The notes beneath the pieces are model-generated. The model saw only the letters and a list, made by a program, of their open reading frames with translations, had not been told where the DNA came from and made no database searches. A DNA stretch of 64,000 bases, from IMG/VR virus record IMGVR_UViG_3300033233_000001, positions 1 to 64,000 of that record, one strand, 5' to 3'. Shown in pieces: positions 6,375-62,333 of this stretch. Within the stretch, counting starts at the first letter, position 1, and every line of letters begins with the position of its first letter. The position numbers were made by a program, and so were the translations under genes.

Positions 6375-7697
6375 ATGGCGAATCGAAGCCCAATCTACAC
6401 GGTGGATTTTGCAGTTGCGCCTGACTCGCCGCAGGCGCTTGAGGGTCACCAGTTCTGGGGTCGATTTCCGTACGACGCTGGAGCCGTGAACACGGGCTCG
6501 TCGACCGGCGCGCGTCAGCTACCGAACGAAAAGGGAAATGCGCTGGCGAACCCGACGTTCGCGAGGCTTCAGGTCGGCGACTACGCTTGTACGAGCGACG
6601 CGACGCTGACAAACATCGGCTTCTATCAGTGCCGATCTGTCGGGACGGCTGGTGGTGCCGACGCTGTGTGGTGGCGTCTGGACGGTGTTAGGGAACAGTT
6701 TTTTGCTACGTCTACTTCGACGACCTTCACCGTCCCGGCGAACATCACGCAGGTGGATGTTTACCTTAGGCCAGGATCTGGCGGTGGCTCATCCGGCGCC
6801 GGTGGCGGCGCTGGCTTCGGGGGTGCGCCTGGCGGTGGCGGAGGCGGCGGCAAGGGCGGCGGTGCCGGTGGCGCGTGTTCGTTGCAAGGTCCATTTGGGA
6901 TCTCCACTACACCCGGAGAAGTGCTGACTCTAACGGTGGGAGCGGCTGGTACGGCGGGGGCGGCCGTGGCGGCGGGTGCCAATGGTCTTGCTGGCGGCGC
7001 TGGTGGCAACTCGGAGATCTTGCGCGGCGCAACGCGGTTGGTGCGGGCGGCTGAAGGTTCCAACATCGGTGGTGGTGCAGGTGCAGGCGCGGCGCTCGCC
7101 GGCACTGCGGGCACTGCGGGCGCAGTTGGTGTCGGCGGTACGACTGGCGCGGCCGGCGGCGTGGCCTGGCCTGGTGGTCCACTCAGCGGCGCGTCGTCCG
7201 CCGCGGTTACGGCCGGCGCCAACGGTGGCAACGGTGGCGCGGTCGCGGGCGGCGCGGGAGTGGCTGGCACCTCGATCAGCGCGGGCTCGCCGTTGACCTG
7301 GGGTATCAGCACGACCACGACGAACTCAACCGGCGGCGCTGCCGGTGCGACCGGCGGCACGAACGGCGGCGGCGGTGGCGGGGGCGCCGGTGGCTGCACA
7401 GGCAATGGCGACGAACGCGCGCTCTTTGGCCTCGCAATCCCCGCGCAGTCAGGCGCCGGTTCCGGCAAGGGCGCTGACGGCGGCGCTGGCGGTGCGGGCG
7501 CGGGCGCCGGGACCGGCGTCACGGGCACCGGAGGCGGGACGGGCTCCACTGGTTCGGGCGGTCGTGGCGGCGGCGGCGGCGGTGGCGGCGGCGGCGGCGG
7601 GGCCGGCGCGACGGCTGGCGGCGCTGGCGGCGGCGGCGGCGCTGGCGGCGTAGGCGACACCGGGTTTATTGTCATCGTCTGGGTGGGGACGACATGA
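6375..7697 (+). CDS. Glycine-rich tail fibre protein
   Basis: TFTVPANITQVDVYLRPGSGGG and GEVLTLTVGAAG motifs, long G/A tracts, ends GDTGFIVIVW. Confidence 0.8.
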   Translation: MANRSPIYTVDFAVAPDSPQALEGHQFWGRFPYDAGAVNTGSSTGARQLPNEKGNALANPTFARLQVGDYACTSDATLTNIGFYQCRSVGTAGGADAVWWRLDGVREQFFATSTSTTFTVPANITQVDVYLRPGSGGGSSGAGGGAGFGGAPGGGGGGGKGGGAGGACSLQGPFGISTTPGEVLTLTVGAAGTAGAAVAAGANGLAGGAGGNSEILRGATRLVRAAEGSNIGGGAGAGAALAGTAGTAGAVGVGGTTGAAGGVAWPGGPLSGASSAAVTAGANGGNGGAVAGGAGVAGTSISAGSPLTWGISTTTTNSTGGAAGATGGTNGGGGGGGAGGCTGNGDERALFGLAIPAQSGAGSGKGADGGAGGAGAGAGTGVTGTGGGTGSTGSGGRGGGGGGGGGGGGAGATAGGAGGGGGAGGVGDTGFIVIVWVGTT

Positions 7698-10336: not shown

Positions 10337-11678
10337 TTGAAATCCTCCGCTCCCTAGCCCGGAGGCTGAGGAAGCGGATTCCCAGGCTCACGCCCAAGAT
10401 CTTCCTGCTTCAACCCCGACCGCACCGGATTCCGAAGAACACGATGTCTTACACCAGGTCCACAGGCAGTCACCGCGAGACCCGCGGCCAGTTGTCGCAG
10501 TCCAGCTGCGAGAACGTTACGTGCAGCATTCACGTCGCGGTCGTGCTCAGCGCCACACTCTGGGCACTGCCATTCGCGCACGCTCAGCGGCAGGTCATCG
10601 AGAAGATACCCGCAGCAGCTGCATGTCTTGGAACTCGGAAACCAACGGTCGACCTTGATCAGGGTACGACCGTACCACTCGCACTTGTACTCCAACTGCC
10701 TCACCAACTCGCCCCAGCCGACATCGCTGATGGCCCGTGCCAGGCTCCGGTTCTTGATCATCCCACTGACGTTGAGACCTTCAACCGCGATCACTTGGGT
10801 TTCGCGAACGAGGTTGGTCGTCAACTTGTGGAGATTGTCCAGACGCCGGTCTGCTACGCGAGCGTTCAACTTGCCGAGCTTGATGCGAGCCTTGTCCCGA
10901 TTCTTCGAGCCTTTCTTTTTGCGCGCGAGACTGCGCGACAGGAACCTCTTGCGCCCGAGTTCACGGTCGTCGTGACGCGGGTTCGCGACCTTTTCACCCG
11001 TCGAGAACGTAACCAGCGACGTGATGCCCAGGTCAAGGCCGACGGCGCTCTCGATGGGCAGCGGCTTCAAGCGCTCGACTTTGTCCTCGCAGAGCAGCGA
11101 GACGTGCCAGCGGCCGGCAGCGTCGAGACCGACGGTCACGGTCGAGGGGTCGACGTTCTCCGGAAGCGGACGACTCCAACGGATGCCGAGCGGCGTGTCC
11201 ATCTTCGCGAGGGTCAGCTTGCCGTCGCGCCAGGTGAACGCGCTACGCGTGAACTCTGCGGAGCCACCGTCACCCTTCTTCTTGAACCTCGGGAACCTCG
11301 CTTGTTTCTTGAAGAACCTCTGCCGAGCACCGTGCATGTGCCGCAAGGCCTGTTGGAGCGGGACACACGAAACCGTGTTCAGCCAAGCGAATTCCGGCAG
11401 CTTCTTCCACGCCGTCAGGTGGGCACTCTGCTTGTTGTACGTCGGCGACTTCTTGGTCGCCGCGTACGAATTGTTGCATTCGCCCAGGCTATGGTTGTAG
11501 ACCCAGCGTGCACAGCCGATTGTCCGACGCAGCAGGGGCTCCTGCTCGGGCGTCGGGTAGAACCGGTAGCGGAAGCCGCGGAGGACCACGCGCAGAGCGT
11601 AGGGCACTTCGGCGACGAGATCAAGAACCGTTTCCTCCCCTGCCTGCAAAGCCGAGGCAGGGGTTTCCACGGAGGATC
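10337..11678 (-). mobile_element. IS200/IS605-family tnpB-only element 1 (IS1341-like)
   Basis: Right end GAAT + CCGCTTCC/GGGAGCGG hairpin ending TCAA; left-end hairpin CCCCTGCC/GGCAGGGG; inferred target TCAG (11679-11682); in-frame empty-site reconstruction. Confidence 0.85.
10354..11670 (-). CDS. tnpB: TnpB RNA-guided nuclease (true start possibly GTG 11589)
   Basis: FRYRFYPTPEQ HTH, RuvC VGLDLG / IAVEGL / DRDVNAA, Zn finger CSCCG...CPECG. Confidence 0.95.
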   Translation of the reverse strand: METPASALQAGEETVLDLVAEVPYALRVVLRGFRYRFYPTPEQEPLLRRTIGCARWVYNHSLGECNNSYAATKKSPTYNKQSAHLTAWKKLPEFAWLNTVSCVPLQQALRHMHGARQRFFKKQARFPRFKKKGDGGSAEFTRSAFTWRDGKLTLAKMDTPLGIRWSRPLPENVDPSTVTVGLDAAGRWHVSLLCEDKVERLKPLPIESAVGLDLGITSLVTFSTGEKVANPRHDDRELGRKRFLSRSLARKKKGSKNRDKARIKLGKLNARVADRRLDNLHKLTTNLVRETQVIAVEGLNVSGMIKNRSLARAISDVGWGELVRQLEYKCEWYGRTLIKVDRWFPSSKTCSCCGYLLDDLPLSVREWQCPECGAEHDRDVNAARNVLAAGLRQLAAGLAVTACGPGVRHRVLRNPVRSGLKQEDLGREPGNPLPQPPG

Positions 11679-12028
11679 CTGATGATAGTCGCCGGACTCG
11701 CCCTTGGCGTCTGCCGACTGTTCGGCATGGACATGGGCGATGTTATTGAGCGTGGCCTCCCGCAACACGAGTCGTCGCTGCTTGGCGTGCTGGAGTCTGA
11801 GCGCAAGCGTTCTGGCGATTAGCGTTGCTCGTTGCTCCCGCACGAGCACCTCGCTCGGAAGTCCGGGATCGAGTCGCCGCGCGCGGTTCTCGGCGTGGTA
11901 GTAGACCACGACGGGTGGCTTCGGCACGGCGGCCATCGGCATCGAGTGTCGGGCCGTTTCCGGCCTCGGTCAACTCGGATCCGAGTCCCCCTTGTTTCCT
12001 TGCGAGGTCGAGGTTACCGTCGTCGTTC

Positions 12029-32783: not shown

Positions 32784-33176
32784 ATGAAGAAGTTTCTCGT
32801 CGTCGAGCGGCAGGTTGGCGGCTGCGACTACACGATCGGCTGTGGCGTCCGCGTCTACACCGAAGAAGCCGAGTCGATGGCCGCGCTCGTCGCCAAGTTC
32901 AAGCGCGGCTGCGTGCTCACGGAGGACGAGTGCTACGGCACGGACGCGCCGCATCCTGATGAGTCCGACCTGTGGGACCGGTGCAGCGGCTGGCTCGAAG
33001 GGGAACAGGCGCGCGAGTCGGTCGCGGTCTACGAGATCGGCGAGAGCGTCGCGCTGTCGCTGGTTGTGTGGCGGAAGGAAGCTCGCGTGACCGAAGCCGC
33101 TCGGGCAGCGGCGGACGCCGAGAAGAACGAGCGCGACACGCTGAAGAAGCTCCAGCAGAAGTACGGTGCGCCGTAA
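32784..33176 (+). CDS. Hypothetical protein; stop codon supplied by the IS right end
   Basis: TAA at 33174-33176 lies inside the element terminus GTAA. Confidence 0.7.
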   Translation: MKKFLVVERQVGGCDYTIGCGVRVYTEEAESMAALVAKFKRGCVLTEDECYGTDAPHPDESDLWDRCSGWLEGEQARESVAVYEIGESVALSLVVWRKEARVTEAARAAADAEKNERDTLKKLQQKYGAP

Positions 33177-34475
33177 ACCTAACCCCGGCCTAAAGGCCGA
33201 GGCTTTGCACCTGAGTGACAACATGGAGATGCCCGTAGGTACCCCCAACACTCGACGCGTCCGGCCGGGTTACAGCGGCCAGGCTCATGGCACTGTACGT
33301 CGCGAGACCGCGACGGCTGATGTTCTGAGCCGCGATGGTATCGGCATGACCAGCGTGGCCACACCATACGCATTCAAAGACTGCCTGGCTCTTCCGGTTC
33401 GCCTTGCTGACGAAGCCGCACGCCGGACACGTCCTCGACGTGTTCCGGGGGTCGACCACCATCAGCGCGACGCCCGCCAAGCACGCCTTGTAGGTCACGA
33501 AGCCACGCAGCTGAGCAAAAGACCACGAGGAGCGCACCCGACGCTGTGCCTTCCGAACCGTTGTCCGCTCGCGGATGCCCGTCAGGTCTTCCAGGGCAAT
33601 CCCACGTCCGGTGTCTTTGGCACGGGTGACGATCTTCTTGCTCACGCGATGGTTCGTGTCTCTAGCGAATCTCATCTCCTTCCTGCGACGCTTCTTCAGA
33701 AGCCGCTTCGCACTCTTGGTACCAACAGACTGGAGCTTCGAGCGGGTGTTAGCGTACCGCTCGCGGACGACATTCAGGTGGTCTCCCGCGAAGACCGTAC
33801 CGTCCGAGTCGGTCGTGATGTTCACGACGCCGAGGTCTACGCCGAGAAAGTCGACGGGCTCTGCGGGCTTCTCGTACGGGATGCTGACGCTGACGAGCAG
33901 GTAGAACTCGTTGTCGCGGAAGACCAAGTCGGCCTCGCCGTACTTCGAGGAGAGCAGGCGTTCTCGGTCAGCGTCGCGGAAGAGGATGGGACAGCGGATG
34001 CGACCGTCGAGTGTCGTGAGCGTGATTTCCGTCGACTCCTTCTTGAACGAGTACAGTCTCGTGTCGTAGGCGACGCTGCCGCGCGGGCGGAAGGTCGGGC
34101 AGATACTGCGGTCGCGGACGTAGGCGTCGCAGACCTTTGCAATCGTCCGAATGGCCATCTGCGACGGGAGGCCGAAATCGGCTCGCATGTCGTAGTAGAA
34201 CAGCCGCTGGAGCCGGCGCTTGTCGGCGAGCTTGTGCTCGAAGGCTCGGGGCGCGAGCCAGTTGGCCGCAGCGTTCATGCGCTCCATGGTCGAGAGCAGC
34301 GAGTCGCGCGGCGCCTCGTCGAGCACGAGCTTGCCCTGGACAACCAGAACGGTCGGCGCGTCGGGCTTCTTCGGCTTGCACTTGCGAACCACGGGCGGAT
34401 GGTACCACAGATCTGGAGCACGGAGCAGCGCTTCCTCCCCGCCCTGAAGGACGGGGCTTCCGCGCTGGAGATGTG
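33173..34475 (-). mobile_element. IS200/IS605-family tnpB-only element 2
   Basis: Right end AAAG-CCTCGGCC/GGCCGGGG...GGTTTAC; left-end hairpin CCCCGTCC..GGGCGGGG; target TCAC (34476-34479); TnpA-tail remnant RFLPALKDGASA on + strand. Confidence 0.9.
33190..34392 (-). CDS. tnpB: TnpB RNA-guided nuclease, different clade from elements 1 and 3
   Basis: RuvC FLGVDLG / IALEDL / HADTIAA; CPACG...CVWCG. Confidence 0.95.
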   Translation of the reverse strand: MVRKCKPKKPDAPTVLVVQGKLVLDEAPRDSLLSTMERMNAAANWLAPRAFEHKLADKRRLQRLFYYDMRADFGLPSQMAIRTIAKVCDAYVRDRSICPTFRPRGSVAYDTRLYSFKKESTEITLTTLDGRIRCPILFRDADRERLLSSKYGEADLVFRDNEFYLLVSVSIPYEKPAEPVDFLGVDLGVVNITTDSDGTVFAGDHLNVVRERYANTRSKLQSVGTKSAKRLLKKRRRKEMRFARDTNHRVSKKIVTRAKDTGRGIALEDLTGIRERTTVRKAQRRVRSSWSFAQLRGFVTYKACLAGVALMVVDPRNTSRTCPACGFVSKANRKSQAVFECVWCGHAGHADTIAAQNISRRGLATYSAMSLAAVTRPDASSVGGTYGHLHVVTQVQSLGL

Positions 34476-46585: not shown

Positions 46586-46830
46586 GTGAGCACGAGTTCG
46601 ATCCGAAGTGTCCGGACTGTCGACCGGTACTGCTGGACCCGACGACCGGTCGCATGCTGGGGCCGAAAGACCCGGCGATGGTTGCAGCCAGCAAGGCCTG
46701 GGACGAGCAGCTGACGCGCGAACAGCAGGAGGCGTGTCATCGGGTCTGGGTGAAGAACAGCCGAGATCCCGCCGACCTGGAAGCGCTGGAGTGCTTCGCG
46801 GCCATGATGCAGAAGATGGCTGGGAACTGA
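46582..46830 (+). CDS. Hypothetical protein
   Basis: CPDC; GTGA overlap. Confidence 0.6.
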   Translation: MSEHEFDPKCPDCRPVLLDPTTGRMLGPKDPAMVAASKAWDEQLTREQQEACHRVWVKNSRDPADLEALECFAAMMQKMAGN

Positions 46831-46844
46831 GAGGAGACACCAAG

Positions 46845-48215
46845 ATGGGTAGCGGCGAGAACATTTTGCTAGCCAGCGACAGTTACAAGATTTCTCACTG
46901 GCGGCAATATCCGAAGGGCACGCAGCGCGTGTATTCCTTCATGGAGTCTCGCGGTGGCGTCCACGCCGACGTGACCTTCTTCGGCCTCCAGTACCTGCTG
47001 ACGCGGTACCTCGAAGGGCCGGTGGTTACGGCCGAAGATCTGGCCGAAGCCACTGACTTCTACCGCGCGCACTTCGGCGCAGATCTGCTGAACGTCGACG
47101 GCTGGCAGCACATCATCGACAAGCACGGCGGCCGTCTACCGGTCGAGATCTGCGCCGTTCCGGAGGGCACGGTCGTGCCCGTGCGCAACGTGCTCATGAC
47201 GATCGAGAACACGGACCCGAAGGTCCCGTGGCTGACGAATTTTCTAGAGACGTTGCTGTGCCAGGTGTGGTACCCGGTCACGGTTGCCACGCAATCGCGC
47301 GCGATGCGCAAGCTGATCCTCGACGCGCTGGAGCATACCGGCGACCCGTCTCTCGTGGATTTCAAGCTCCACGACTTCGGCTTCCGCGGCAGCACGTCGG
47401 TCGAGTCCGCTGGCATCGGCGCGGCGGCGCACCTCGTGAACTTCAAGGGCACTGACACCGTCGCTGGCCTCGTGCTCGCGCGCGACTACTACAGCGAGCC
47501 GATGGCCGGTTTTAGCGTGCCTGCCAGCGAACACAGCACCATCACGTCCTGGGGCCGCGAGCACGAGGTCGACGCGTACCGCAACATGCTCGACCAGTTC
47601 CCGACCGGGCTCGTGGCCTGCGTGTCGGACAGCTACGACATCTACGCGGCCTGTCGCGATCTCTGGGGTACCGAGCTTCGAGACCGCGTGCTCTCGCGCG
47701 ACGGCTGTCTCGTCGTGCGGCCGGACAGCGGCGATCCGCCGACCGTCGTCGTCACGGTGCTCGACATCCTCGGCGAGAAGTTCGGGTTCACCATCAACGA
47801 GAAGGGCTACCGCGTGCTCGACCCGCACGTCCGCGTCATCCAGGGAGACGGCATCGACTACGAGATGCTTGGGAAGATCCTCTCTGCGATGGAGCGTGCC
47901 CGCTGGTCGGCCGATAACGTCGCGTTCGGCTCTGGCGGGGGCCTTCTCCAGAAGGTGAACCGCGACACGCAGAAGTTTGCGATCAAGTGCTCGGCCGTGC
48001 AGATCAACGGTGAATGGCGTGACGTGCTCAAGGACCCGGTAACCGACCCTGGGAAGAAGTCGAAAGCCGGGCGCCTGCGTCTCGTCCGCGAGGACGGCGT
48101 GTACAAGACAGTGACCGGCGAGGGCCCGACGCTGCTGGAGCCGGTGTTCCGTGATGGCGTCGTGTTGCGGCGACAGACGTTCGCTGACGTGCGCCGCCGG
48201 GCTGTTGCCACATGA
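46845..48215 (+). CDS. nadV: Nicotinamide phosphoribosyltransferase (NAMPT)
   Basis: SDSYKISH, HDFGFRG, PASEHS, VSDSYD, RPDSGDP, IQGDGI, FGSGGGLLQ, RDTQKFAIKCS. Confidence 0.97.
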   Translation: MGSGENILLASDSYKISHWRQYPKGTQRVYSFMESRGGVHADVTFFGLQYLLTRYLEGPVVTAEDLAEATDFYRAHFGADLLNVDGWQHIIDKHGGRLPVEICAVPEGTVVPVRNVLMTIENTDPKVPWLTNFLETLLCQVWYPVTVATQSRAMRKLILDALEHTGDPSLVDFKLHDFGFRGSTSVESAGIGAAAHLVNFKGTDTVAGLVLARDYYSEPMAGFSVPASEHSTITSWGREHEVDAYRNMLDQFPTGLVACVSDSYDIYAACRDLWGTELRDRVLSRDGCLVVRPDSGDPPTVVVTVLDILGEKFGFTINEKGYRVLDPHVRVIQGDGIDYEMLGKILSAMERARWSADNVAFGSGGGLLQKVNRDTQKFAIKCSAVQINGEWRDVLKDPVTDPGKKSKAGRLRLVREDGVYKTVTGEGPTLLEPVFRDGVVLRRQTFADVRRRAVAT

Positions 48216-48478
48216 AGCCGCTAGAGTTCAAGGAGAAGATGTACGCGCTGCTCATGCGAGCGGCACAGAACGAGCTTGAGCCTAGCGTGGTCCTTTCCGA
48301 GCTTGGTGATGCGTACGCGTGTCTGGCTCACTGCGGGGGCGTATCGAAGGAAGACGCGTTGAAAGAGATAGCCGACCTCTACGACGACAACGTTGTCATT
48401 GGACACGAGATGGAACGTGAACGCGGCGTACACGGTAGAAACGGATGCTCCGATCCATCCCTTCGGAGACGGCGCTGA
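48212..48478 (+). CDS. Hypothetical protein whose 3' end runs into the first CRISPR repeat
   Basis: ATGA overlap with nadV; last codons encoded by repeat 1. Confidence 0.55.
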   Translation: MKPLEFKEKMYALLMRAAQNELEPSVVLSELGDAYACLAHCGGVSKEDALKEIADLYDDNVVIGHEMERERGVHGRNGCSDPSLRRRR

Positions 48479-48532
48479 CGGGGGGAAGACGATGCCGAGC
48501 AAGACGACTGTAGAAACGGATGCTCCGATCCA

Positions 48533-48994
48533 TCACTGTTCCTCGGCGCGGGAACCCCGTCCTTCAGGACGAGGAGGAGCGCCGCTCCGGTTTTGGTTCT
48601 GGACGTAGCGCGCGACGACTTCTAGCGGCGCGCCGCCGCACGACACGGCGCAGTAGCTCGGCGACCAGAAGTGATCTCCCCAGAGCACGTTCGTGACCTC
48701 GCGAAAGTTCTGCGCCCGCAGCCGTCGCGCGGACACACCCTTGAGCGAGTTCACGAGCTTGGCGATCGCGACCTTCGGCGGGTAGTCGATGAGCAGATGC
48801 GCGTGGTCCGGCTCGAAGTTGGCCTCCCGAAGCTCGCTTCCGAAGTCGGCGCAGACCTCAACCCACGACGCTCGCAGAATCTCGAACGCTCGCTCCGAGA
48901 TCGCGCCTCGCCGGTACTTCGGCACGAAGACCAAGTGCACGGACAGCTTGTGCACGACGTGCCGCCCCTTGCGAAAGTTCTCGACCTGTGCCAT
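48533..48994 (-). CDS. tnpA: IS200-type Y1 HUH transposase
   Basis: HLVFVPKYRR, DHAHLLI (HUH), LVNSLKGVSAR, FWSPSY, RYVQNQ. Confidence 0.97.
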   Translation of the reverse strand: MAQVENFRKGRHVVHKLSVHLVFVPKYRRGAISERAFEILRASWVEVCADFGSELREANFEPDHAHLLIDYPPKVAIAKLVNSLKGVSARRLRAQNFREVTNVLWGDHFWSPSYCAVSCGGAPLEVVARYVQNQNRSGAPPRPEGRGSRAEEQ

Positions 48995-50305
48995 CCTGGC
49001 GTTTCTAGCATGTCGGACACCGACGGCAAGACCAAAAAGCTCAGGACGTCTCGGTACCGGGTCTATCCGACCGACGAGCAGGTCGCCCGCATCGAAGCGT
49101 GGCAGGATCCGCTGCGTCTGCTCTGGAATCTCGGCAACCAGCAGTACTTGTTCTCGCAGGAGCGTTGCCGTTACGGTCGGAAGTGGCCGCACCCGTTCGA
49201 GCAGGCGAACCAGTTGACCGAACTTCGCGCTGAACACGAGCGGCTGCGCGACGTCCCGTACGATCTTGCCGCGCGCGTCTTCGTCGAGTTGAACCTGTCC
49301 TGGCAGCGATGCTGGGCTGGGCTCGCCGAGCAGCCGCGGTTCAAGTCGAAGAATCGCGGCGACTGGACGGTCATGTGCGAGCCGAACCCGAAGGTGTTTC
49401 GGGCCGAGGATGATGCGATCGTCTTCCCGAAGCTCGGGCGGATCGAAGCGGTCGTCCACCGTCCTCTGCTCGGCAAGCCGAAGACCTGCACGATTACCCG
49501 TGACATAGATGAGTGGTACGTCTCGATCGCCTGCGAAGTCGTACGCGATCCTGATGCGTTGCCGCCGCCCGTGCCGGTCGGCGCGCCGGTCGGCATCGAC
49601 CGCGGCGTAGTGAACCTGTTGATGGACAGCAACGCGCGGCCGACGGCGAACGCGCGGTACGACGACCAGACACGTGTGCAGGTCGCTCGTGCGCAGCGCT
49701 CTGCGGCCAAGAAGAAAAAGGGAGGAAAGAACAGGAAGAAAGCAAACAAGGTTGTATCCCGTCTGCGAAGGAAGGCGCGCCGGCAGCGCGACGCCGTTCT
49801 GCATCGCGAGAGTCTTCACTACGCCAAAAATCACAGCGTGGTGGTCATCGAGAAGCTGAACCTCCCGAACATGACGAGGAGTGCGAGTGGCACGGTCGAG
49901 GAGCCCGGTACGAACGTCGCGCAGAAGCGCGGGTTGAACCGGAGCATCCTCGGCGCGGGCCTCGGCAAGTTCGGGACGTACTTGAAGTACAAGGCCAAGG
50001 ACCACGGGTCGACGGTTGTCGAGGTACCGGCGGCCTACACGTCTCAGACGTGCTCGTCGTGCGGACACGTCGCGGCCGAGTCCCGGAAGACACAGAGCGA
50101 GTTCGAGTGCGTCGCGTGCGGTTATTGCCTGCATGCTGACGTGAACGCTGCCAAGGTGATACTCAGCCGTGGAACCCACGGCGGTGCAGTCTGCGGAGGA
50201 TCCGGCGCCCTAGGCCGCCCGAAGAAGCAGAAACTCCGCGTCGTGAGGCGCGGATCTCGATCTGTGTCCGGGAAAGCCCCGGACTTCAGGCCGGGGTAGG
50301 TTTAT
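48537..50305 (+). mobile_element. Complete IS605-type element 3 (divergent tnpA and tnpB)
   Basis: Left-end hairpin CCCCGTCC-TTCA-GGACGAGG after TCAC; right end AAAG-CCCCGG/CCGGGG-TAGGTTTAT; both ends align to element 2. Confidence 0.9.
49010..50299 (+). CDS. tnpB: TnpB RNA-guided nuclease, 429 aa
   Basis: RYRVYPTDEQ; RuvC VGIDRG / VVIEKL / HADVNAA; CSSCG...CVACG. Confidence 0.97.
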   Translation: MSDTDGKTKKLRTSRYRVYPTDEQVARIEAWQDPLRLLWNLGNQQYLFSQERCRYGRKWPHPFEQANQLTELRAEHERLRDVPYDLAARVFVELNLSWQRCWAGLAEQPRFKSKNRGDWTVMCEPNPKVFRAEDDAIVFPKLGRIEAVVHRPLLGKPKTCTITRDIDEWYVSIACEVVRDPDALPPPVPVGAPVGIDRGVVNLLMDSNARPTANARYDDQTRVQVARAQRSAAKKKKGGKNRKKANKVVSRLRRKARRQRDAVLHRESLHYAKNHSVVVIEKLNLPNMTRSASGTVEEPGTNVAQKRGLNRSILGAGLGKFGTYLKYKAKDHGSTVVEVPAAYTSQTCSSCGHVAAESRKTQSEFECVACGYCLHADVNAAKVILSRGTHGGAVCGGSGALGRPKKQKLRVVRRGSRSVSGKAPDFRPG

Positions 50306-50576
50306 GAAGGTAACCCTGACCACGGTGGTAGAAACGGATGCTCCGATCCATCCCTTCGGAGACTCGTAGGCCATCTTGCTACGCTCCGTCGGGTCTCGTG
50401 TAGAAACGGATGCTCCGATCCATCCATTCGGAGACGACGCACAAGGCCACCTGCGAGATCTCTGCGGGTTCGCGAGTAGAAACGGATGCTCCGATCCGTC
50501 CCCTCGGAGACCTCACCGGCACGTGCAGCCGGGCGCGATACTCGACGGACGGTAGGGTTCAAGGTATCCTCGCGAG

Positions 50577-51095
50577 ATGGACACATCCTCCGAGAAGGAC
50601 ATCTGGTGGTTTTTACTCACTTTTTGGCCGTCGATCGTGGTCGCGCTCGCCGTCTACGGCGGCGGCGTGACGGCGAATCGCATCGCGGGGGTCTTCGTGC
50701 CGGCTGCGAAGGACTACTTGACCGGCAAGACGGCCGACGCCGATCCGAAGTGGCCGCTGACCTTCCGGCTCTGGGCCGCGACACGCACCGCGCACCCGTT
50801 CTTCGTCGGCGGGTCCTTCGCATTCGTGCCTGGCCTGCCGCATCCGGACTTCATCAGTAGCCAAGTTAGCGCGGTTCTCTGGTTCGCATTCGCTGGCATG
50901 ATGAACGGTCAAGTCCACATGCTCGTTGATGCTATGAGCAGTCAGGTCCAGAAGGTCGTTGGCAGTCTCGCGCCTGCGATCCGAACACGTCTCGGCCTGC
51001 GTCCGACGACAGTGCCCCCGGGACCGCCCGAGGCGGCGGCCCCAGCCGCTTCAGACAAGCCGCCGTCCGACCCGCCGCCACCGGAGGCCGCGTGA
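50577..51095 (+). CDS. Membrane protein (holin-like possible)
   Basis: 2-3 hydrophobic segments; Pro-rich tail. Confidence 0.55.
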   Translation: MDTSSEKDIWWFLLTFWPSIVVALAVYGGGVTANRIAGVFVPAAKDYLTGKTADADPKWPLTFRLWAATRTAHPFFVGGSFAFVPGLPHPDFISSQVSAVLWFAFAGMMNGQVHMLVDAMSSQVQKVVGSLAPAIRTRLGLRPTTVPPGPPEAAAPAASDKPPSDPPPPEAA

Positions 51096-57310: not shown

Positions 57311-57820
57311 TCACCACCCGTTGGTGAGGTAAGCCTCGCGCACCGCGTCGTCGTCGCACTCCAGCGCAGCGTCGAAGATCAGCAGAAACTTGTTGTCATC
57401 GGTCTCCGTGTCGTAGCAGACCATGACGTGCGTCTTTGTGCGGTAGACCCACTTCGGCAGGAAGCGCTGTGTGTAGATGGGCCCGCCGAAGAACTCTGGA
57501 TAGTTGGCCTTGGTGTCCTTGCCGGACGCGATGTCGGCTTCCAGGTGGGCGCGGGCGTCCTCGAAGGTGCGCGCTGCGAGCGGCTCGTCCGAGTAGACCA
57601 GCTTGGCGCCGGCCCCTTCTCCGCCCACCAGCATCCAGCGCTGTCCGCGGCAGTCGTCGAGCGGGATCTCAACATAATCTGGCTTGTAGCAGAACGCCTT
57701 GTGGACGGCGGCCTTCGCCGAGAAGTACGCGTCGATCTGCGTGTCCAGTGGTGTGAGCTTCTTCTTCTTCATCGGAGCGAGCTTCTTCTTCTTCATCGGA
57801 GCGAGCTTCTTCTTCTTCAT
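57311..57820 (-). CDS. Hypothetical protein with triplicated N-terminal MKKKKLAP
   Basis: In-frame ATGs at 57820, 57796 and 57772. Confidence 0.7.
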   Translation of the reverse strand: MKKKKLAPMKKKKLAPMKKKKLTPLDTQIDAYFSAKAAVHKAFCYKPDYVEIPLDDCRGQRWMLVGGEGAGAKLVYSDEPLAARTFEDARAHLEADIASGKDTKANYPEFFGGPIYTQRFLPKWVYRTKTHVMVCYDTETDDNKFLLIFDAALECDDDAVREAYLTNGW

Positions 57821-57826
57821 CGGAGC
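57755..57826. repeat. Perfect 3 x 24-bp tandem repeat
   Basis: GAGCTTCTTCTTCTTCATCGGAGC x3. Confidence 0.95.
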
Positions 57827-58089
57827 GACTTTCGCTTGCGCTTCACGCGCCGGCCGCGAGCGAAGAGGCACTTGATCGCCGCCTGCTTCGCGGCGTACAT
57901 GATGTCCTGCATCTCGTCGTTGGTGAAGTCCGGCGGCCTCTCCAGGCCGAGGTCCGCACTCACGCGGCCGATTGGTCGCATGTGCGGGTGTTGGTCGTCC
58001 TTCGTCCACCGCGAATGTTCGGTGGTGAAGACGTGGAGGTGCAGCAGCACCTCTTCCGCGAATGCCGGGCCCTGGTCCTTTGCGCTCAT
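57817..58089 (-). CDS. Hypothetical protein
   Basis: ATGA-coupled. Confidence 0.55.
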   Translation of the reverse strand: MSAKDQGPAFAEEVLLHLHVFTTEHSRWTKDDQHPHMRPIGRVSADLGLERPPDFTNDEMQDIMYAAKQAAIKCLFARGRRVKRKRKSLR

Positions 58090-61949: not shown

Positions 61950-62333
61950 TCAGCCCTTCGCACGCTTCGCGGCGGGCGTGGTCGATGAGGATCGTCGGTC
62001 GCGAAGGCGAAGTTGCCGCCACGTGCGTCTTGAGGTACCGTCTGCGCTGGATGCTCCGATCCATCCACTCGGAGACGCCAGACGCGCGAGCCGCGCCCAC
62101 GCTTGCTGCGCCGCGGCCCCGAAGACGGGGCGCGCCGCGCCGGGGAGCATGACGCCGACGTCCGCCGGCAGCAGGCCAGTGGCGATCCAGTACTCGCCGG
62201 TCGGCGTGCCGTAGACCGGCTCCGCCTCGTCGATCTCGCGCTCCTGGGCTTCGACGAGCACTTCCGAGCGGCCGTCGAAGATCCACAGGCCGCTGTCGCC
62301 GCCCTGGTCCCAGGTGAGGTCGAAGATGCGCAT
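61950..62333 (-). CDS. Hypothetical protein whose 3' part reads through the solitary repeat
   Basis: TGATG coupling to the upstream gene. Confidence 0.5.
   Translation of the reverse strand: MRIFDLTWDQGGDSGLWIFDGRSEVLVEAQEREIDEAEPVYGTPTGEYWIATGLLPADVGVMLPGAARPVFGAAAQQAWARLARLASPSGWIGASSADGTSRRTWRQLRLRDRRSSSTTPAAKRAKG
62049..62076. repeat. Solitary 28-nt CRISPR repeat unit
   Basis: GGATGCTCCGATCCATCCACTCGGAGAC = repeat positions 9-36 with 2 mismatches. Confidence 0.85.

What the first reader, a model, noticed from the sequence alone, without database searches (positions are those of the whole stretch)
48510..50327. Non-clean insertion junction: about 25 nt missing and right end TTAT instead of TTAC
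Seen: removing the element leaves 25 nt of repeat + AC + 22 nt before the next repeat (49 nt, versus 72-76 nt for intact units). The right end has guide AAAG but ends TTAT, while sibling element 2 has AAAG...TTAC. Known: IS200/605 insertion is non-deleting, and in IS608 AAAG specifies TTAC and GAAT specifies TCAA; elements 1 and 2 obey this. Inference, two models: (a) insertion in the spacer, then a TC-microhomology deletion of the repeat 3' end and spacer start; (b) a deletion removing the last right-end base plus the repeat remainder. Either may immobilise the element and fix the guide, an early domestication step.
Basis: partly seen in the sequence, partly recalled or inferred. Interest (0 to 1): 0.7.

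Follow-up and report, generated by a model that had tools for sequence, protein, structure and literature searches.

The report
IS605 transposon inside a phage CRISPR repeat
An ordinary IS200/IS605-type jumping gene (tnpA plus tnpB) sits in the second repeat of a small cas-less CRISPR array on a 298-kb phage genome; about 26-30 bases beside its right end are missing and its last base departs from the family rule, a small scar with no sign of domestication.

Summary
The interpretation needs correcting.

**What is there:** a 1,772-bp IS200/IS605-family element (48534-50305) with tnpA on the minus strand and tnpB on the plus strand, both apparently intact. It interrupts repeat 2 of a five-repeat orphan CRISPR array on a 297,749-bp virus contig.

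**The rule used:** the published IS608 guide/cleavage-site pairing. It held for 41 of 45 right ends and 9 of 10 left ends of TnpB relatives.

**Left junction:** the left-end guide GGAA predicts target CCAT. That is exactly repeat nt 21-24, in the loop of the repeat hairpin, 21 nt 5' of the left hairpin. The left junction is therefore clean.

**Right junction:** all missing DNA lies right of the element. It comprises repeat nt 25-36, 14-18 nt of spacer, and possibly whole units.

**Right end:** guide AAAG is paired with TTAT. All 11 relatives with AAAG end in TTAC.

**Most likely history:** one secondary deletion starting at, or one base inside, the right end.

**Possible selection (inferred):** a clean insertion would have produced an omega-RNA guide whose first 12 nt match sister repeats.

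**Not found:** a second copy, an empty site, or any evidence of domestication.

Interest is low to moderate.

The parts
48435..48470 (+). CRISPR repeat 1 (36 nt, intact). The spacer that follows, 48471-48509, is 39 nt.
   Evidence: As RNA it folds into a 6-bp stem (nt 14-19 with 29-34) and a 9-nt loop.
48510..48533 (+). Repeat 2, first 24 nt only. It ends in CCAT (48530-48533), which is the inferred TnpA target and TnpB TAM core and lies in the loop of the repeat hairpin.
   Evidence: Exact match to the repeat. CCAT is predicted from the left-end guide GGAA by the IS608 pairing geometry, tested on relatives. Loop position.
48534..48590 (+). Left end of the element. It has a 21-nt linker starting CAC (48534-48554) whose last four bases are the guide GGAA (48551-48554), an imperfect hairpin (48555-48574), and an outer GCGC stem around an internal loop.
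   Evidence: It is 87-88% alike to the left end of element 2. The same two-tier structure is seen in L019, L001 and L002.
48533..48994 (-). tnpA, a Y1 (HUH) transposase of 153 aa. Its stop codon TGA is the complement of 48533-48535 and so straddles the left junction.
   Evidence: Pfam Y1_Tnp E 5.8e-37. It aligns to ISDra2 and IS608 TnpA structures with the HxH motif and the catalytic Tyr (PSYC) conserved.
49010..50299 (+). tnpB, an RNA-guided nuclease of 429 aa, transcribed divergently from tnpA (IS605-like layout).
   Evidence: Pfam OrfB_IS605 and Cas12f1-like TNB. It aligns to solved TnpB structures with the RuvC D/E/D motifs present. The best relative in 5.8 billion proteins is 58% identical.
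50273..50305 (+). Right end of the element: guide AAAG (50273-50276), imperfect hairpin (50277-50296), and tail TAGGTTTAT ending in TTAT (50302-50305). The family rule predicts TTAC here.
   Evidence: The tail length (9 nt) matches relatives (8-10 nt).
50306..50327 (+). A 22-nt remnant of the spacer's 3' end, which is now the omega-RNA guide region. Repeat nt 25-36 and 14-18 nt of spacer that should precede it are absent.
   Evidence: It abuts repeat 3 as other spacers abut their repeats. No match in the genome, the fetched loci or viral contigs.
50328..50511 (+). Repeats 3, 4 and 5 (50328-50363, 50400-50435, 50476-50511) with spacers of 36 and 40 nt. Repeat 5 has two mismatches and looks like the degenerate terminal repeat.
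33173..34475 (-). Element 2 (comparator). It carries tnpB only. Its left end is TCAC | CAC..., guide GAAG, hairpin. Its right end is AAAG, hairpin, TTAGGTTTAC.
10337..11681 (-). Element 1 (comparator). It carries tnpB only. Its left end is TCAT | CAGG..., guide GAAA, hairpin. Its right end is GAAT, hairpin, ...TCAA.

Best explanation
**What it is.** An autonomous IS200/IS605-family insertion sequence with an IS605-like layout: divergent tnpA and tnpB, 1,772 bp. It transposed as single-stranded DNA into the second repeat of an orphan CRISPR array on a huge phage.

**Where it landed.** It inserted immediately 3' of CCAT, which sits in the loop of the repeat's hairpin. Its left-end guide GGAA base-pairs with that tetranucleotide. 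The left junction is intact.

**What happened afterwards (inferred).**
- A single deletion next to the right end removed the rest of the repeat (12 nt) and the first 14-18 nt of the spacer, possibly plus whole repeat-spacer units.
- The deletion probably began one base inside the element. The terminal C of the expected TTAC is gone, and the T now in its place would then come from the spacer. Alternatively the C mutated to T.

**Consequences.**
- One spacer has lost its repeat handle, and the array is split by 1.8 kb.
- The right cleavage site now pairs with its guide through a G-T wobble instead of G-C. This may lower excision.
- The omega-RNA guide is now 22 nt of spacer instead of repeat sequence.

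**Plausible selective reason (inferred).** A clean insertion would have given a guide starting with the 12 repeat-derived bases. Repeats 1 and 3 carry those same 12 bases next to the same CCAT. ISDra2 TnpB needs only about 12 TAM-proximal base pairs, so the phage would have targeted its own array.

**Shown:** the element, its genes, both ends, the clean left target, the missing right-flank DNA, and the TTAT deviation.
**Inferred:** the order of events, one deletion rather than two events, the self-targeting pressure, and reduced mobility.
For: - **Genes:** identified by Pfam and by alignment to solved TnpA and TnpB structures, with catalytic residues present.
- **Pairing geometry:** the cleavage-site first base pairs with guide base 2, the second with guide base 1, the third is an unpaired A, and the fourth pairs with guide base 4. 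This is the published IS608 geometry (PMC3201880).
- **Rule at right ends:** 41 of 45 recognisable right-end hairpins carry the predicted tetranucleotide 4-7 nt after the hairpin, across six guide types.
- **Rule at left ends:** 9 of 10 canonical left-end hairpins carry the predicted site 16-21 nt upstream, two of them at 21 nt.
- **This element's left end:** GGAA predicts CCAT, found at 48530-48533, 21 nt from the hairpin. The 24 bases to its left are an uninterrupted repeat.
- **Elements 1 and 2:** both obey the rule at both ends.
- **This element's right end:** AAAG with TTAT, against TTAC in 11 of 11 relatives with AAAG.
- **Right flank:** it lacks the repeat's last 12 nt.
- **Assembly:** a Logan contig confirms both junctions at the same depth as the flanks.
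- **Self-targeting premise:** TnpB tolerates mismatches beyond about 12 bp (PMC10097598). Repeats 1 and 3 carry CCAT followed by the same 12 nt.
Against: - No second copy of this element and no empty or undeleted allele was found in any collection or in the source sample. The ancestral sequence of the unit is therefore unknown, and the deletion is inferred only from array periodicity.
- The left boundary rests on a pairing rule, not on an observed empty site. A relative (L036) starts its left end at TGTTC. By homology that would put the boundary 3 nt further right, after TCAC.
- Four of 45 relatives also have one guide/site mismatch, so TTAT could be this element's native end.
- The TAM of this TnpB and its tolerance of 12-nt matches are extrapolated from ISDra2.
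- A single deletion clipping exactly one base of the element cannot be told apart from a flank deletion plus a C-to-T transition.
Confidence: 0.6

Rival explanations
1. Recombination between two copies. One copy of the element inserted in a repeat after CCAT. A second copy, in the same orientation, inserted in a downstream spacer. Homologous recombination between them deleted everything in between. The surviving element keeps the left flank of copy 1 and the right flank of copy 2. TTAT is then an unrelated point mutation or the native end.
For: Every intact repeat carries the CCAT target, so multiple insertions in the array are plausible. The flanks are non-contiguous while both element ends are complete. 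The missing amount is known only modulo one repeat-spacer unit.
Against: Only one copy exists in the 298-kb genome and in the source sample. The second copy would need a CCAT in the lost part of a spacer. This model does not explain why the only deviant base of the right end sits exactly at the irregular junction.
Confidence: 0.15
2. The element inserted into the spacer 3' of TCAC, so the left end starts at TGTTCC (48537). A later deletion then removed the repeat's 3' end and the start of the spacer on the left side.
For: By homology with L036 (TCAT | TGTTCTTCGGGG...) the left end could begin at TGTTCC with an 18-nt linker. Element 2 uses TCAC as its target.
Against: Guide GGAA predicts CCAT. 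TCAC would leave an A-C mismatch at the cleavage-proximal position, and only 1 of 45 surveyed right ends deviated at that position. The model makes both ends of the element deviant. It also needs a left-side deletion whose endpoint happens to recreate an exact CCAT at an allowed distance, and it leaves TTAT unexplained.
Confidence: 0.08
3. No element-associated deletion. The array already contained a truncated unit (24 nt of repeat joined to the 22-nt remnant), the insertion was clean, and TTAT with a G-T wobble is the element's native functional end.
For: IS200/IS605 insertion is precise. About 9% of relatives show one guide/site mismatch. No ancestral allele is available.
Against: The earlier truncation would have to end exactly at the base after which the element later inserted. 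The other three units are regular at 72-76 nt.
Confidence: 0.08
4. Assembly chimera. The junctions were produced by mis-joining at repeated sequence.
For: Assemblers break at CRISPR repeats. The Logan contigs end inside repeats.
Against: One Logan contig of 1,916 nt runs without a difference from repeat 1 through spacer 1, the partial repeat, the whole element and the 22-nt remnant into repeat 3. Its depth equals that of the flanks.
Confidence: 0.02

Closest known systems
IS608 (Helicobacter pylori) and ISDra2 (Deinococcus radiodurans), the studied IS200/IS605 elements
   Same: Y1 HUH TnpA plus TnpB. Subterminal imperfect hairpins. A 4-nt guide 5' of each hairpin that pairs with the cleavage tetranucleotide. 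Insertion 3' of that tetranucleotide with no duplication and no terminal inverted repeats. An omega-RNA running out of the right end. The pair AAAG-TTAC is the same pair IS608 uses at its left end.
   Different: tnpA and tnpB are divergent here. The left target is CCAT with a 21-nt linker. AAAG is used at the right end. The right site is TTAT (G-T instead of G-C). The flank beside the right end is deleted. TnpA is only distantly related (E about 1e-19 to the solved TnpAs).
IS605 / IS606 (H. pylori), with divergent tnpA and tnpB (from my own knowledge of ISfinder descriptions)
   Same: Gene order and divergent orientation, with the left end beside the 3' end of tnpA and the right end beside the 3' end of tnpB.
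   Different: There is no detectable close sequence relationship. The closest TnpB in public data is 58% identical and comes from metagenomes.
TranC / type V-U systems: TnpB-sized nucleases that work with CRISPR arrays (PMC13565253; LaTranC structures appear)
   Same: A TnpB-family nuclease gene lies next to CRISPR repeats. Its scaffold RNA is followed by a spacer-derived segment and then a repeat.
   Different: This is a complete mobile element with its own TnpA and both ends, and it interrupts the array. The repeat bears no resemblance to the omega-RNA scaffold. There is no sign of RNA splitting or a tracrRNA. The juxtaposition is explained by insertion.
Orphan (cas-less) CRISPR arrays of huge phages (from my own knowledge: Al-Shayeb et al. 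2020)
   Same: A short array of 36-nt repeats and 36-40-nt spacers on a roughly 300-kb virus contig with no recognisable cas gene.
   Different: This array is interrupted by a transposon. Two solitary repeat-like units lie elsewhere in the genome.

Membership tests
IS200/IS605 family insertion sequence | Y1 (HUH) single-strand transposase TnpA | tested here: met
   Pfam Y1_Tnp E 5.8e-37. The HxH motif and catalytic Tyr align with ISDra2 and IS608 TnpA.
IS200/IS605 family insertion sequence | TnpB (OrfB) with a RuvC-like nuclease domain and zinc ribbon | tested here: met
   Pfam OrfB_IS605 and Cas12f1-like TNB. The D/E/D motifs align with a solved TnpB-family structure (9j09, labelled 'Transposase'); 8bf8 is listed as a hit only.
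IS200/IS605 family insertion sequence | Subterminal imperfect hairpins at both ends on the same (top) strand, with no terminal inverted repeats | tested here: met
   Left hairpin 48555-48574 and right hairpin 50277-50296, each with one mismatch. The termini are not inverted copies of each other (read).
IS200/IS605 family insertion sequence | The 4-nt guide 5' of each hairpin pairs with the cleavage tetranucleotide | tested here: inconclusive
   Left end: GGAA-CCAT, fully complementary. Right end: AAAG-TTAT, where the last pair is G-T instead of G-C. Relatives obey the rule in 41 of 45 cases.
IS200/IS605 family insertion sequence | Precise insertion 3' of the target without gain or loss of flanking DNA | tested here: not met
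   The left flank is intact. The right flank lacks repeat nt 25-36 and 14-18 nt of spacer. This is read as a secondary deletion, not as a property of the insertion.
IS200/IS605 family insertion sequence | Mobility: several copies, circle junctions or empty sites | tested here: not met
   The element is a single copy in the genome and the sample, and no empty site was seen. The contigs used drop rare variants, so absence is weak evidence.
CRISPR array | Three or more near-identical direct repeats of 23-50 nt separated by unique spacers of similar length | tested here: met
   Five repeats of 36 nt and spacers of 39, 36 and 40 nt. The spacers are unique in the genome.
CRISPR array | Associated cas genes | tested here: not met
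   No Cas family was found among the large ORFs of the 298-kb contig by Pfam or PADLOC, and a motif scan found only four TnpB genes. The search was not exhaustive.
CRISPR array | Spacers match foreign DNA | tested here: inconclusive
   Only the 22-nt remnant was searched in viral contigs, with exact matching, and gave no hit. Other spacers were tested only against this genome and the fetched loci.
TranC / nascent type V CRISPR-Cas | A TnpB-like effector without a transposase or transposon ends, using repeat-derived crRNA | tested here: not met
   TnpA and both ends are present. The repeat is unrelated to the right end or the scaffold.

The most novel reading that the evidence does not exclude
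The insertion plus deletion has fused the omega-RNA scaffold of an active TnpB directly to the 3' 22 nt of a CRISPR spacer, followed by intact repeats. If that transcript is made and trimmed at the next repeat, TnpB would be guided by a spacer acquired by a CRISPR system. That would be a natural snapshot of how a transposon nuclease could start to draw guides from an array. A weaker form is that the deletion was selected because the clean insertion made TnpB target the sister repeats.
Probability: 0.04. Interest if true: 0.85.

Novelty: new member of a known kind. Interest (0 to 1): 0.3.

Why it matters
Taken alone, this is one more IS200/IS605 element. It is notable only for its site, the loop of a CRISPR repeat on a huge phage, and for a small scar at its right end.

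Two points have some wider use:

- **The pairing rule as an annotation tool.** The IS608 guide/cleavage-site pairing held across about 55 ends of very distant TnpB relatives. It can therefore be used to place IS200/IS605 boundaries to the base, and to flag ends that no longer match their guide.
- **A testable prediction about repeated DNA.** Any TnpB element that lands in a repeated sequence creates an omega-RNA whose seed matches the sister repeats. That predicts selection for flank deletions or for loss of TnpB. A survey of IS605 insertions in CRISPR repeats, REP elements and similar sequences could test this.

If such deletions proved common, this locus would be a first example. With a single case it remains a hypothesis.

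Tried and rejected
- **A second copy of the element, to define its ends.**
  - Genome contigs: best relative 33% identical.
  - Viral contigs: best 29%.
  - The 5.8-billion-protein search: best 58%.
  - The phage's own genome: none.
  - The source sample at 80% likeness: none.
- **An empty or undeleted allele.**
  - The repeat was searched in viral contigs and metagenome contigs; only the window's own contig matched.
  - The spacer remnant gave no hit.
  - Logan contigs of the one holding run showed no skipping joint.
- **Related phages, via the neighbouring NAMPT gene.** 57 loci up to 65% identical were found, but none has an array there.
- **ORF restoration after removing element 2, as a boundary test.** It was uninformative, because the element sits at a stop codon and both candidate boundaries keep a stop.
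- **A Cas effector.**
  - Pfam, PADLOC and PDB sequence searches of the large ORFs found none.
  - A zinc-ribbon/RuvC motif scan found only TnpBs.
- **Rfam.** There was no significant family in 48300-50700.
- **Other ideas considered and rejected.**
  - A downstream surrogate right cleavage site (TAAC at 50311-50314): it is in the wrong position, has a mismatch, and does not reduce the missing DNA.
  - The 22 nt being carried donor flank: there is no matching cleavage site.
  - Two adjacent arrays with a degenerate terminal repeat: that would leave a 13-nt gap.
  - Direct TnpB cleavage of its own flank: the right end is not TAM-like.
Full report
**Context.** The window is the first 64 kb of a single 297,749-bp contig (Ga0334722_10000009, sediment metagenome). 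The tools treat it as a virus record. It is 60-68% G+C. Elsewhere it carries intein-bearing helicases, RtcB and a Ro60 homologue, so it looks like a huge phage.

**The array.** A 36-nt repeat occurs intact at 48435, 50328, 50400 and 50476, and as an exact 25-nt prefix at 48510. None is expected by chance.
- Spacers are 39, 36 and 40 nt, and the last repeat has two mismatches.
- As RNA the repeat folds into a 6-bp stem closing a 9-nt loop near its 3' end.
- No cas gene was found. Pfam and PADLOC scans of the large ORFs gave nothing. A zinc-ribbon/RuvC motif scan of all ORFs of 250 aa or more found only TnpB genes.
- The array is therefore an orphan. Two solitary repeat-like units lie at 62038-62076 and at genome position 204952-204987.

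**The insert.** Between the partial repeat and the next repeat lie two genes.
- tnpA is a 153-aa Y1 transposase on the minus strand (48533-48994, Pfam E 5.8e-37).
- tnpB is a 429-aa gene on the plus strand (49010-50299).
- TnpA aligns with the ISDra2 and IS608 enzymes and keeps the HxH motif and the catalytic tyrosine.
- TnpB aligns with solved TnpB structures and keeps the three RuvC acidic motifs.
- The genome has three more tnpB genes and no other tnpA: element 1 at 10337-11681, element 2 at 33173-34475, and one at about 176960-178210.
- Element 2 is not a copy of this element. Its TnpB is 27% identical. It does share 87-88% identity over about 35-45 nt at each end.

In IS608 the first two bases of the guide pair with the second and first bases of the cleavage tetranucleotide. 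The third base, an A, is unpaired. The left site lies 19 nt 5' of the hairpin and the right site 10 nt 3' of it (PMC3201880). I tested this on relatives of this TnpB fetched from metagenomes and viral contigs.
- Right ends: 41 of 45 recognisable hairpins have exactly the predicted tetranucleotide 4-7 nt after the hairpin. The pairs seen are GAAT-TCAA, AAAT-TTAA, AAAG-TTAC, GAAG-TCAC, GAAC-TCAG and CAAG-TGAC. Four ends deviate by one base (examples).
- Left ends: 9 of 10 canonical hairpins have the predicted site 16-21 nt upstream, two of them at 21 nt.
- Elements 1 and 2 obey the rule at both ends.

**Left junction.** The left-end guide is GGAA (48551-48554), which predicts CCAT. CCAT is present at 48530-48533, 21 nt from the hairpin, and it is nt 21-24 of the repeat, inside the hairpin loop. 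Everything to its left is uninterrupted repeat. The element therefore starts at C48534 with CAC, as element 2 does after its TCAC target. The left junction is a normal, clean IS200/IS605 junction.

A relative (L036) begins its left end with TGTTC after TCAT. That boundary has three costs:
- it leaves an A-C mismatch at the cleavage-proximal position;
- it leaves two flank bases that belong neither to the repeat nor to the element;
- it makes both ends of the element deviant.

I give it about 10%.

**Right junction.** The right end reads AAAG (50273-50276), hairpin (50277-50296), TAGGTTTAT (50297-50305). Tail length and sequence match relatives: TAGCATTAC in L019 and L087, and TTAGGTTTAC in element 2. 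All 11 relatives with AAAG end in TTAC. The last base is therefore the one that departs, replacing a G-C pair with a G-T wobble.

A clean insertion would be followed by the repeat's last 12 nt. Instead 22 nt follow that run straight into repeat 3 like the end of a spacer. With the element removed the unit is 46 nt instead of 72-76. So 26-30 nt are missing, or that amount plus any number of whole units.

**Is it real?** A Logan contig assembled independently from the one public run that holds this DNA covers 48441-50356 without a difference. Its word depth is 17.6, against 18.6 and 17.2 for the flanking contigs. The structure is not an artefact of the deposited assembly, and the element is fixed in that population. 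No contig skipping the element was seen, but such contigs drop rare variants.

**Most likely history.** The two anomalies are a missing flank and a deviant terminal base, and they sit at the same phosphodiester bond. The simplest account is one deletion that began one base inside the right end, with the T coming from the spacer. A flank deletion plus a C-to-T transition cannot be excluded, nor can a native TTAT end (9% of relatives carry one mismatch). Recombination between two copies, one in a repeat and one in a spacer, would give the same flanks. I rate that at about 15%.

**A possible reason the deletion survived.** TnpB guides are the roughly 16 nt that follow the right end, and the TAM is the transposase's target (PMC13565253). 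ISDra2 TnpB needs only about 12 TAM-proximal base pairs and tolerates distal mismatches (PMC10097598). A clean insertion after CCAT would have made a guide whose first 12 nt are the repeat's last 12 nt. Repeats 1 and 3 carry exactly CCAT followed by those 12 nt. The phage would then have aimed its own nuclease at its own array, and removing those 12 nt ends that. This is inference from one locus and from another TnpB's properties.

**On domestication.** Nothing here supports it.
- The transposase, the nuclease and both ends are intact.
- The guide of any IS605 element is its flank, so a flank deletion changes the guide but does not fix it.
- If the element excised now, the donor joint would still read CCAT followed by the present guide, which is the normal homing substrate.
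- The CRISPR repeat is unrelated to the omega-RNA scaffold.
- Whether TTAT lowers excision is untested.

**What could not be done.**
- No other copy of this element exists in any collection searched. The best TnpB is 58% identical.
- No other contig carries this repeat or the spacer remnant.
- Phages sharing the neighbouring NAMPT gene have no array there.
- The ancestral unit is therefore unknown, and the order of events is inferred.

**Verdict.** This is a new member of a well-known family, with a small and partly explained scar.

Noticed in passing
window 62038-62076, and genome position 204952-204987 (L033:7153-7188): Solitary repeat-like units lie far from the array. The 204-kb copy is full length with 4 mismatches and lies just after an ORF's stop codon. 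The 62-kb copy keeps only the 3' hairpin half. Neither is followed by a further repeat.
   Followed up: partly
window 33173-34475 compared with 48534-50305: Element 2 has no tnpA, and its TnpB is only 27% identical to that of element 3. Even so, its terminal hairpins are 87-88% alike to those of element 3. It may depend on element 3's TnpA in trans, but with a different left guide (GAAG, target TCAC).
   Followed up: partly
window 48533-48535: The tnpA stop codon (TGA on the minus strand) straddles the left junction. Its last base is supplied by the T of the CCAT target. The final 19 codons of tnpA are encoded by the left-end hairpin region and are not conserved in relatives.
   Followed up: no
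window 50266-50284; L019 and L087 right ends: The right-end guide AAAG also sits in the loop of an alternative stem. That stem changes by compensatory substitutions between relatives: GTCCGGG/CCCGGAC here, CGGGGC/GCCCCG in L019, and GAGGC/GCCTC in L087. This suggests an omega-RNA stem overlapping the DNA-level TnpA guide.
   Followed up: no
L082:2001-3829 (IMGVR_UViG_3300017785_007468): A TnpB-like gene (33% identical, residues 79-384 matched) is followed about 300 nt downstream by a nine-repeat CRISPR array of 37-nt repeats on a viral contig. This may be a compact type V or TranC-like system.
   Followed up: no
L037:541-760 and L038, downstream of its tnpB: IS200/IS605 ends occur in tandem. 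A right end finishing in TTAC is followed directly by another left end (L037), and two right ends sit in series (L038).
   Followed up: no
window 6783-7664: A long GGC-rich stretch of degenerate 9-18-nt periodic repeats would encode a glycine/alanine-rich protein segment (family D1).
   Followed up: no
window 57736-57831: Three to four tandem 24-nt units (TCTTCTTCTTCATCGGAGCGAGCT) (family D6).
   Followed up: no
genome 174275-178210 (L032): A Ro60/TROVE homologue with a vWA domain (627 aa) lies next to the fourth tnpB gene. Inteins with LAGLIDADG domains sit in a UvrD helicase, RtcB and a ResIII helicase elsewhere in the genome.
   Followed up: no
window 46608-48215: A nicotinamide phosphoribosyltransferase gene (NAMPT_N plus NAPRTase domains) lies immediately upstream of the array. 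Homologues up to 65% identical occur on many large viral contigs, without arrays beside them.
   Followed up: partly
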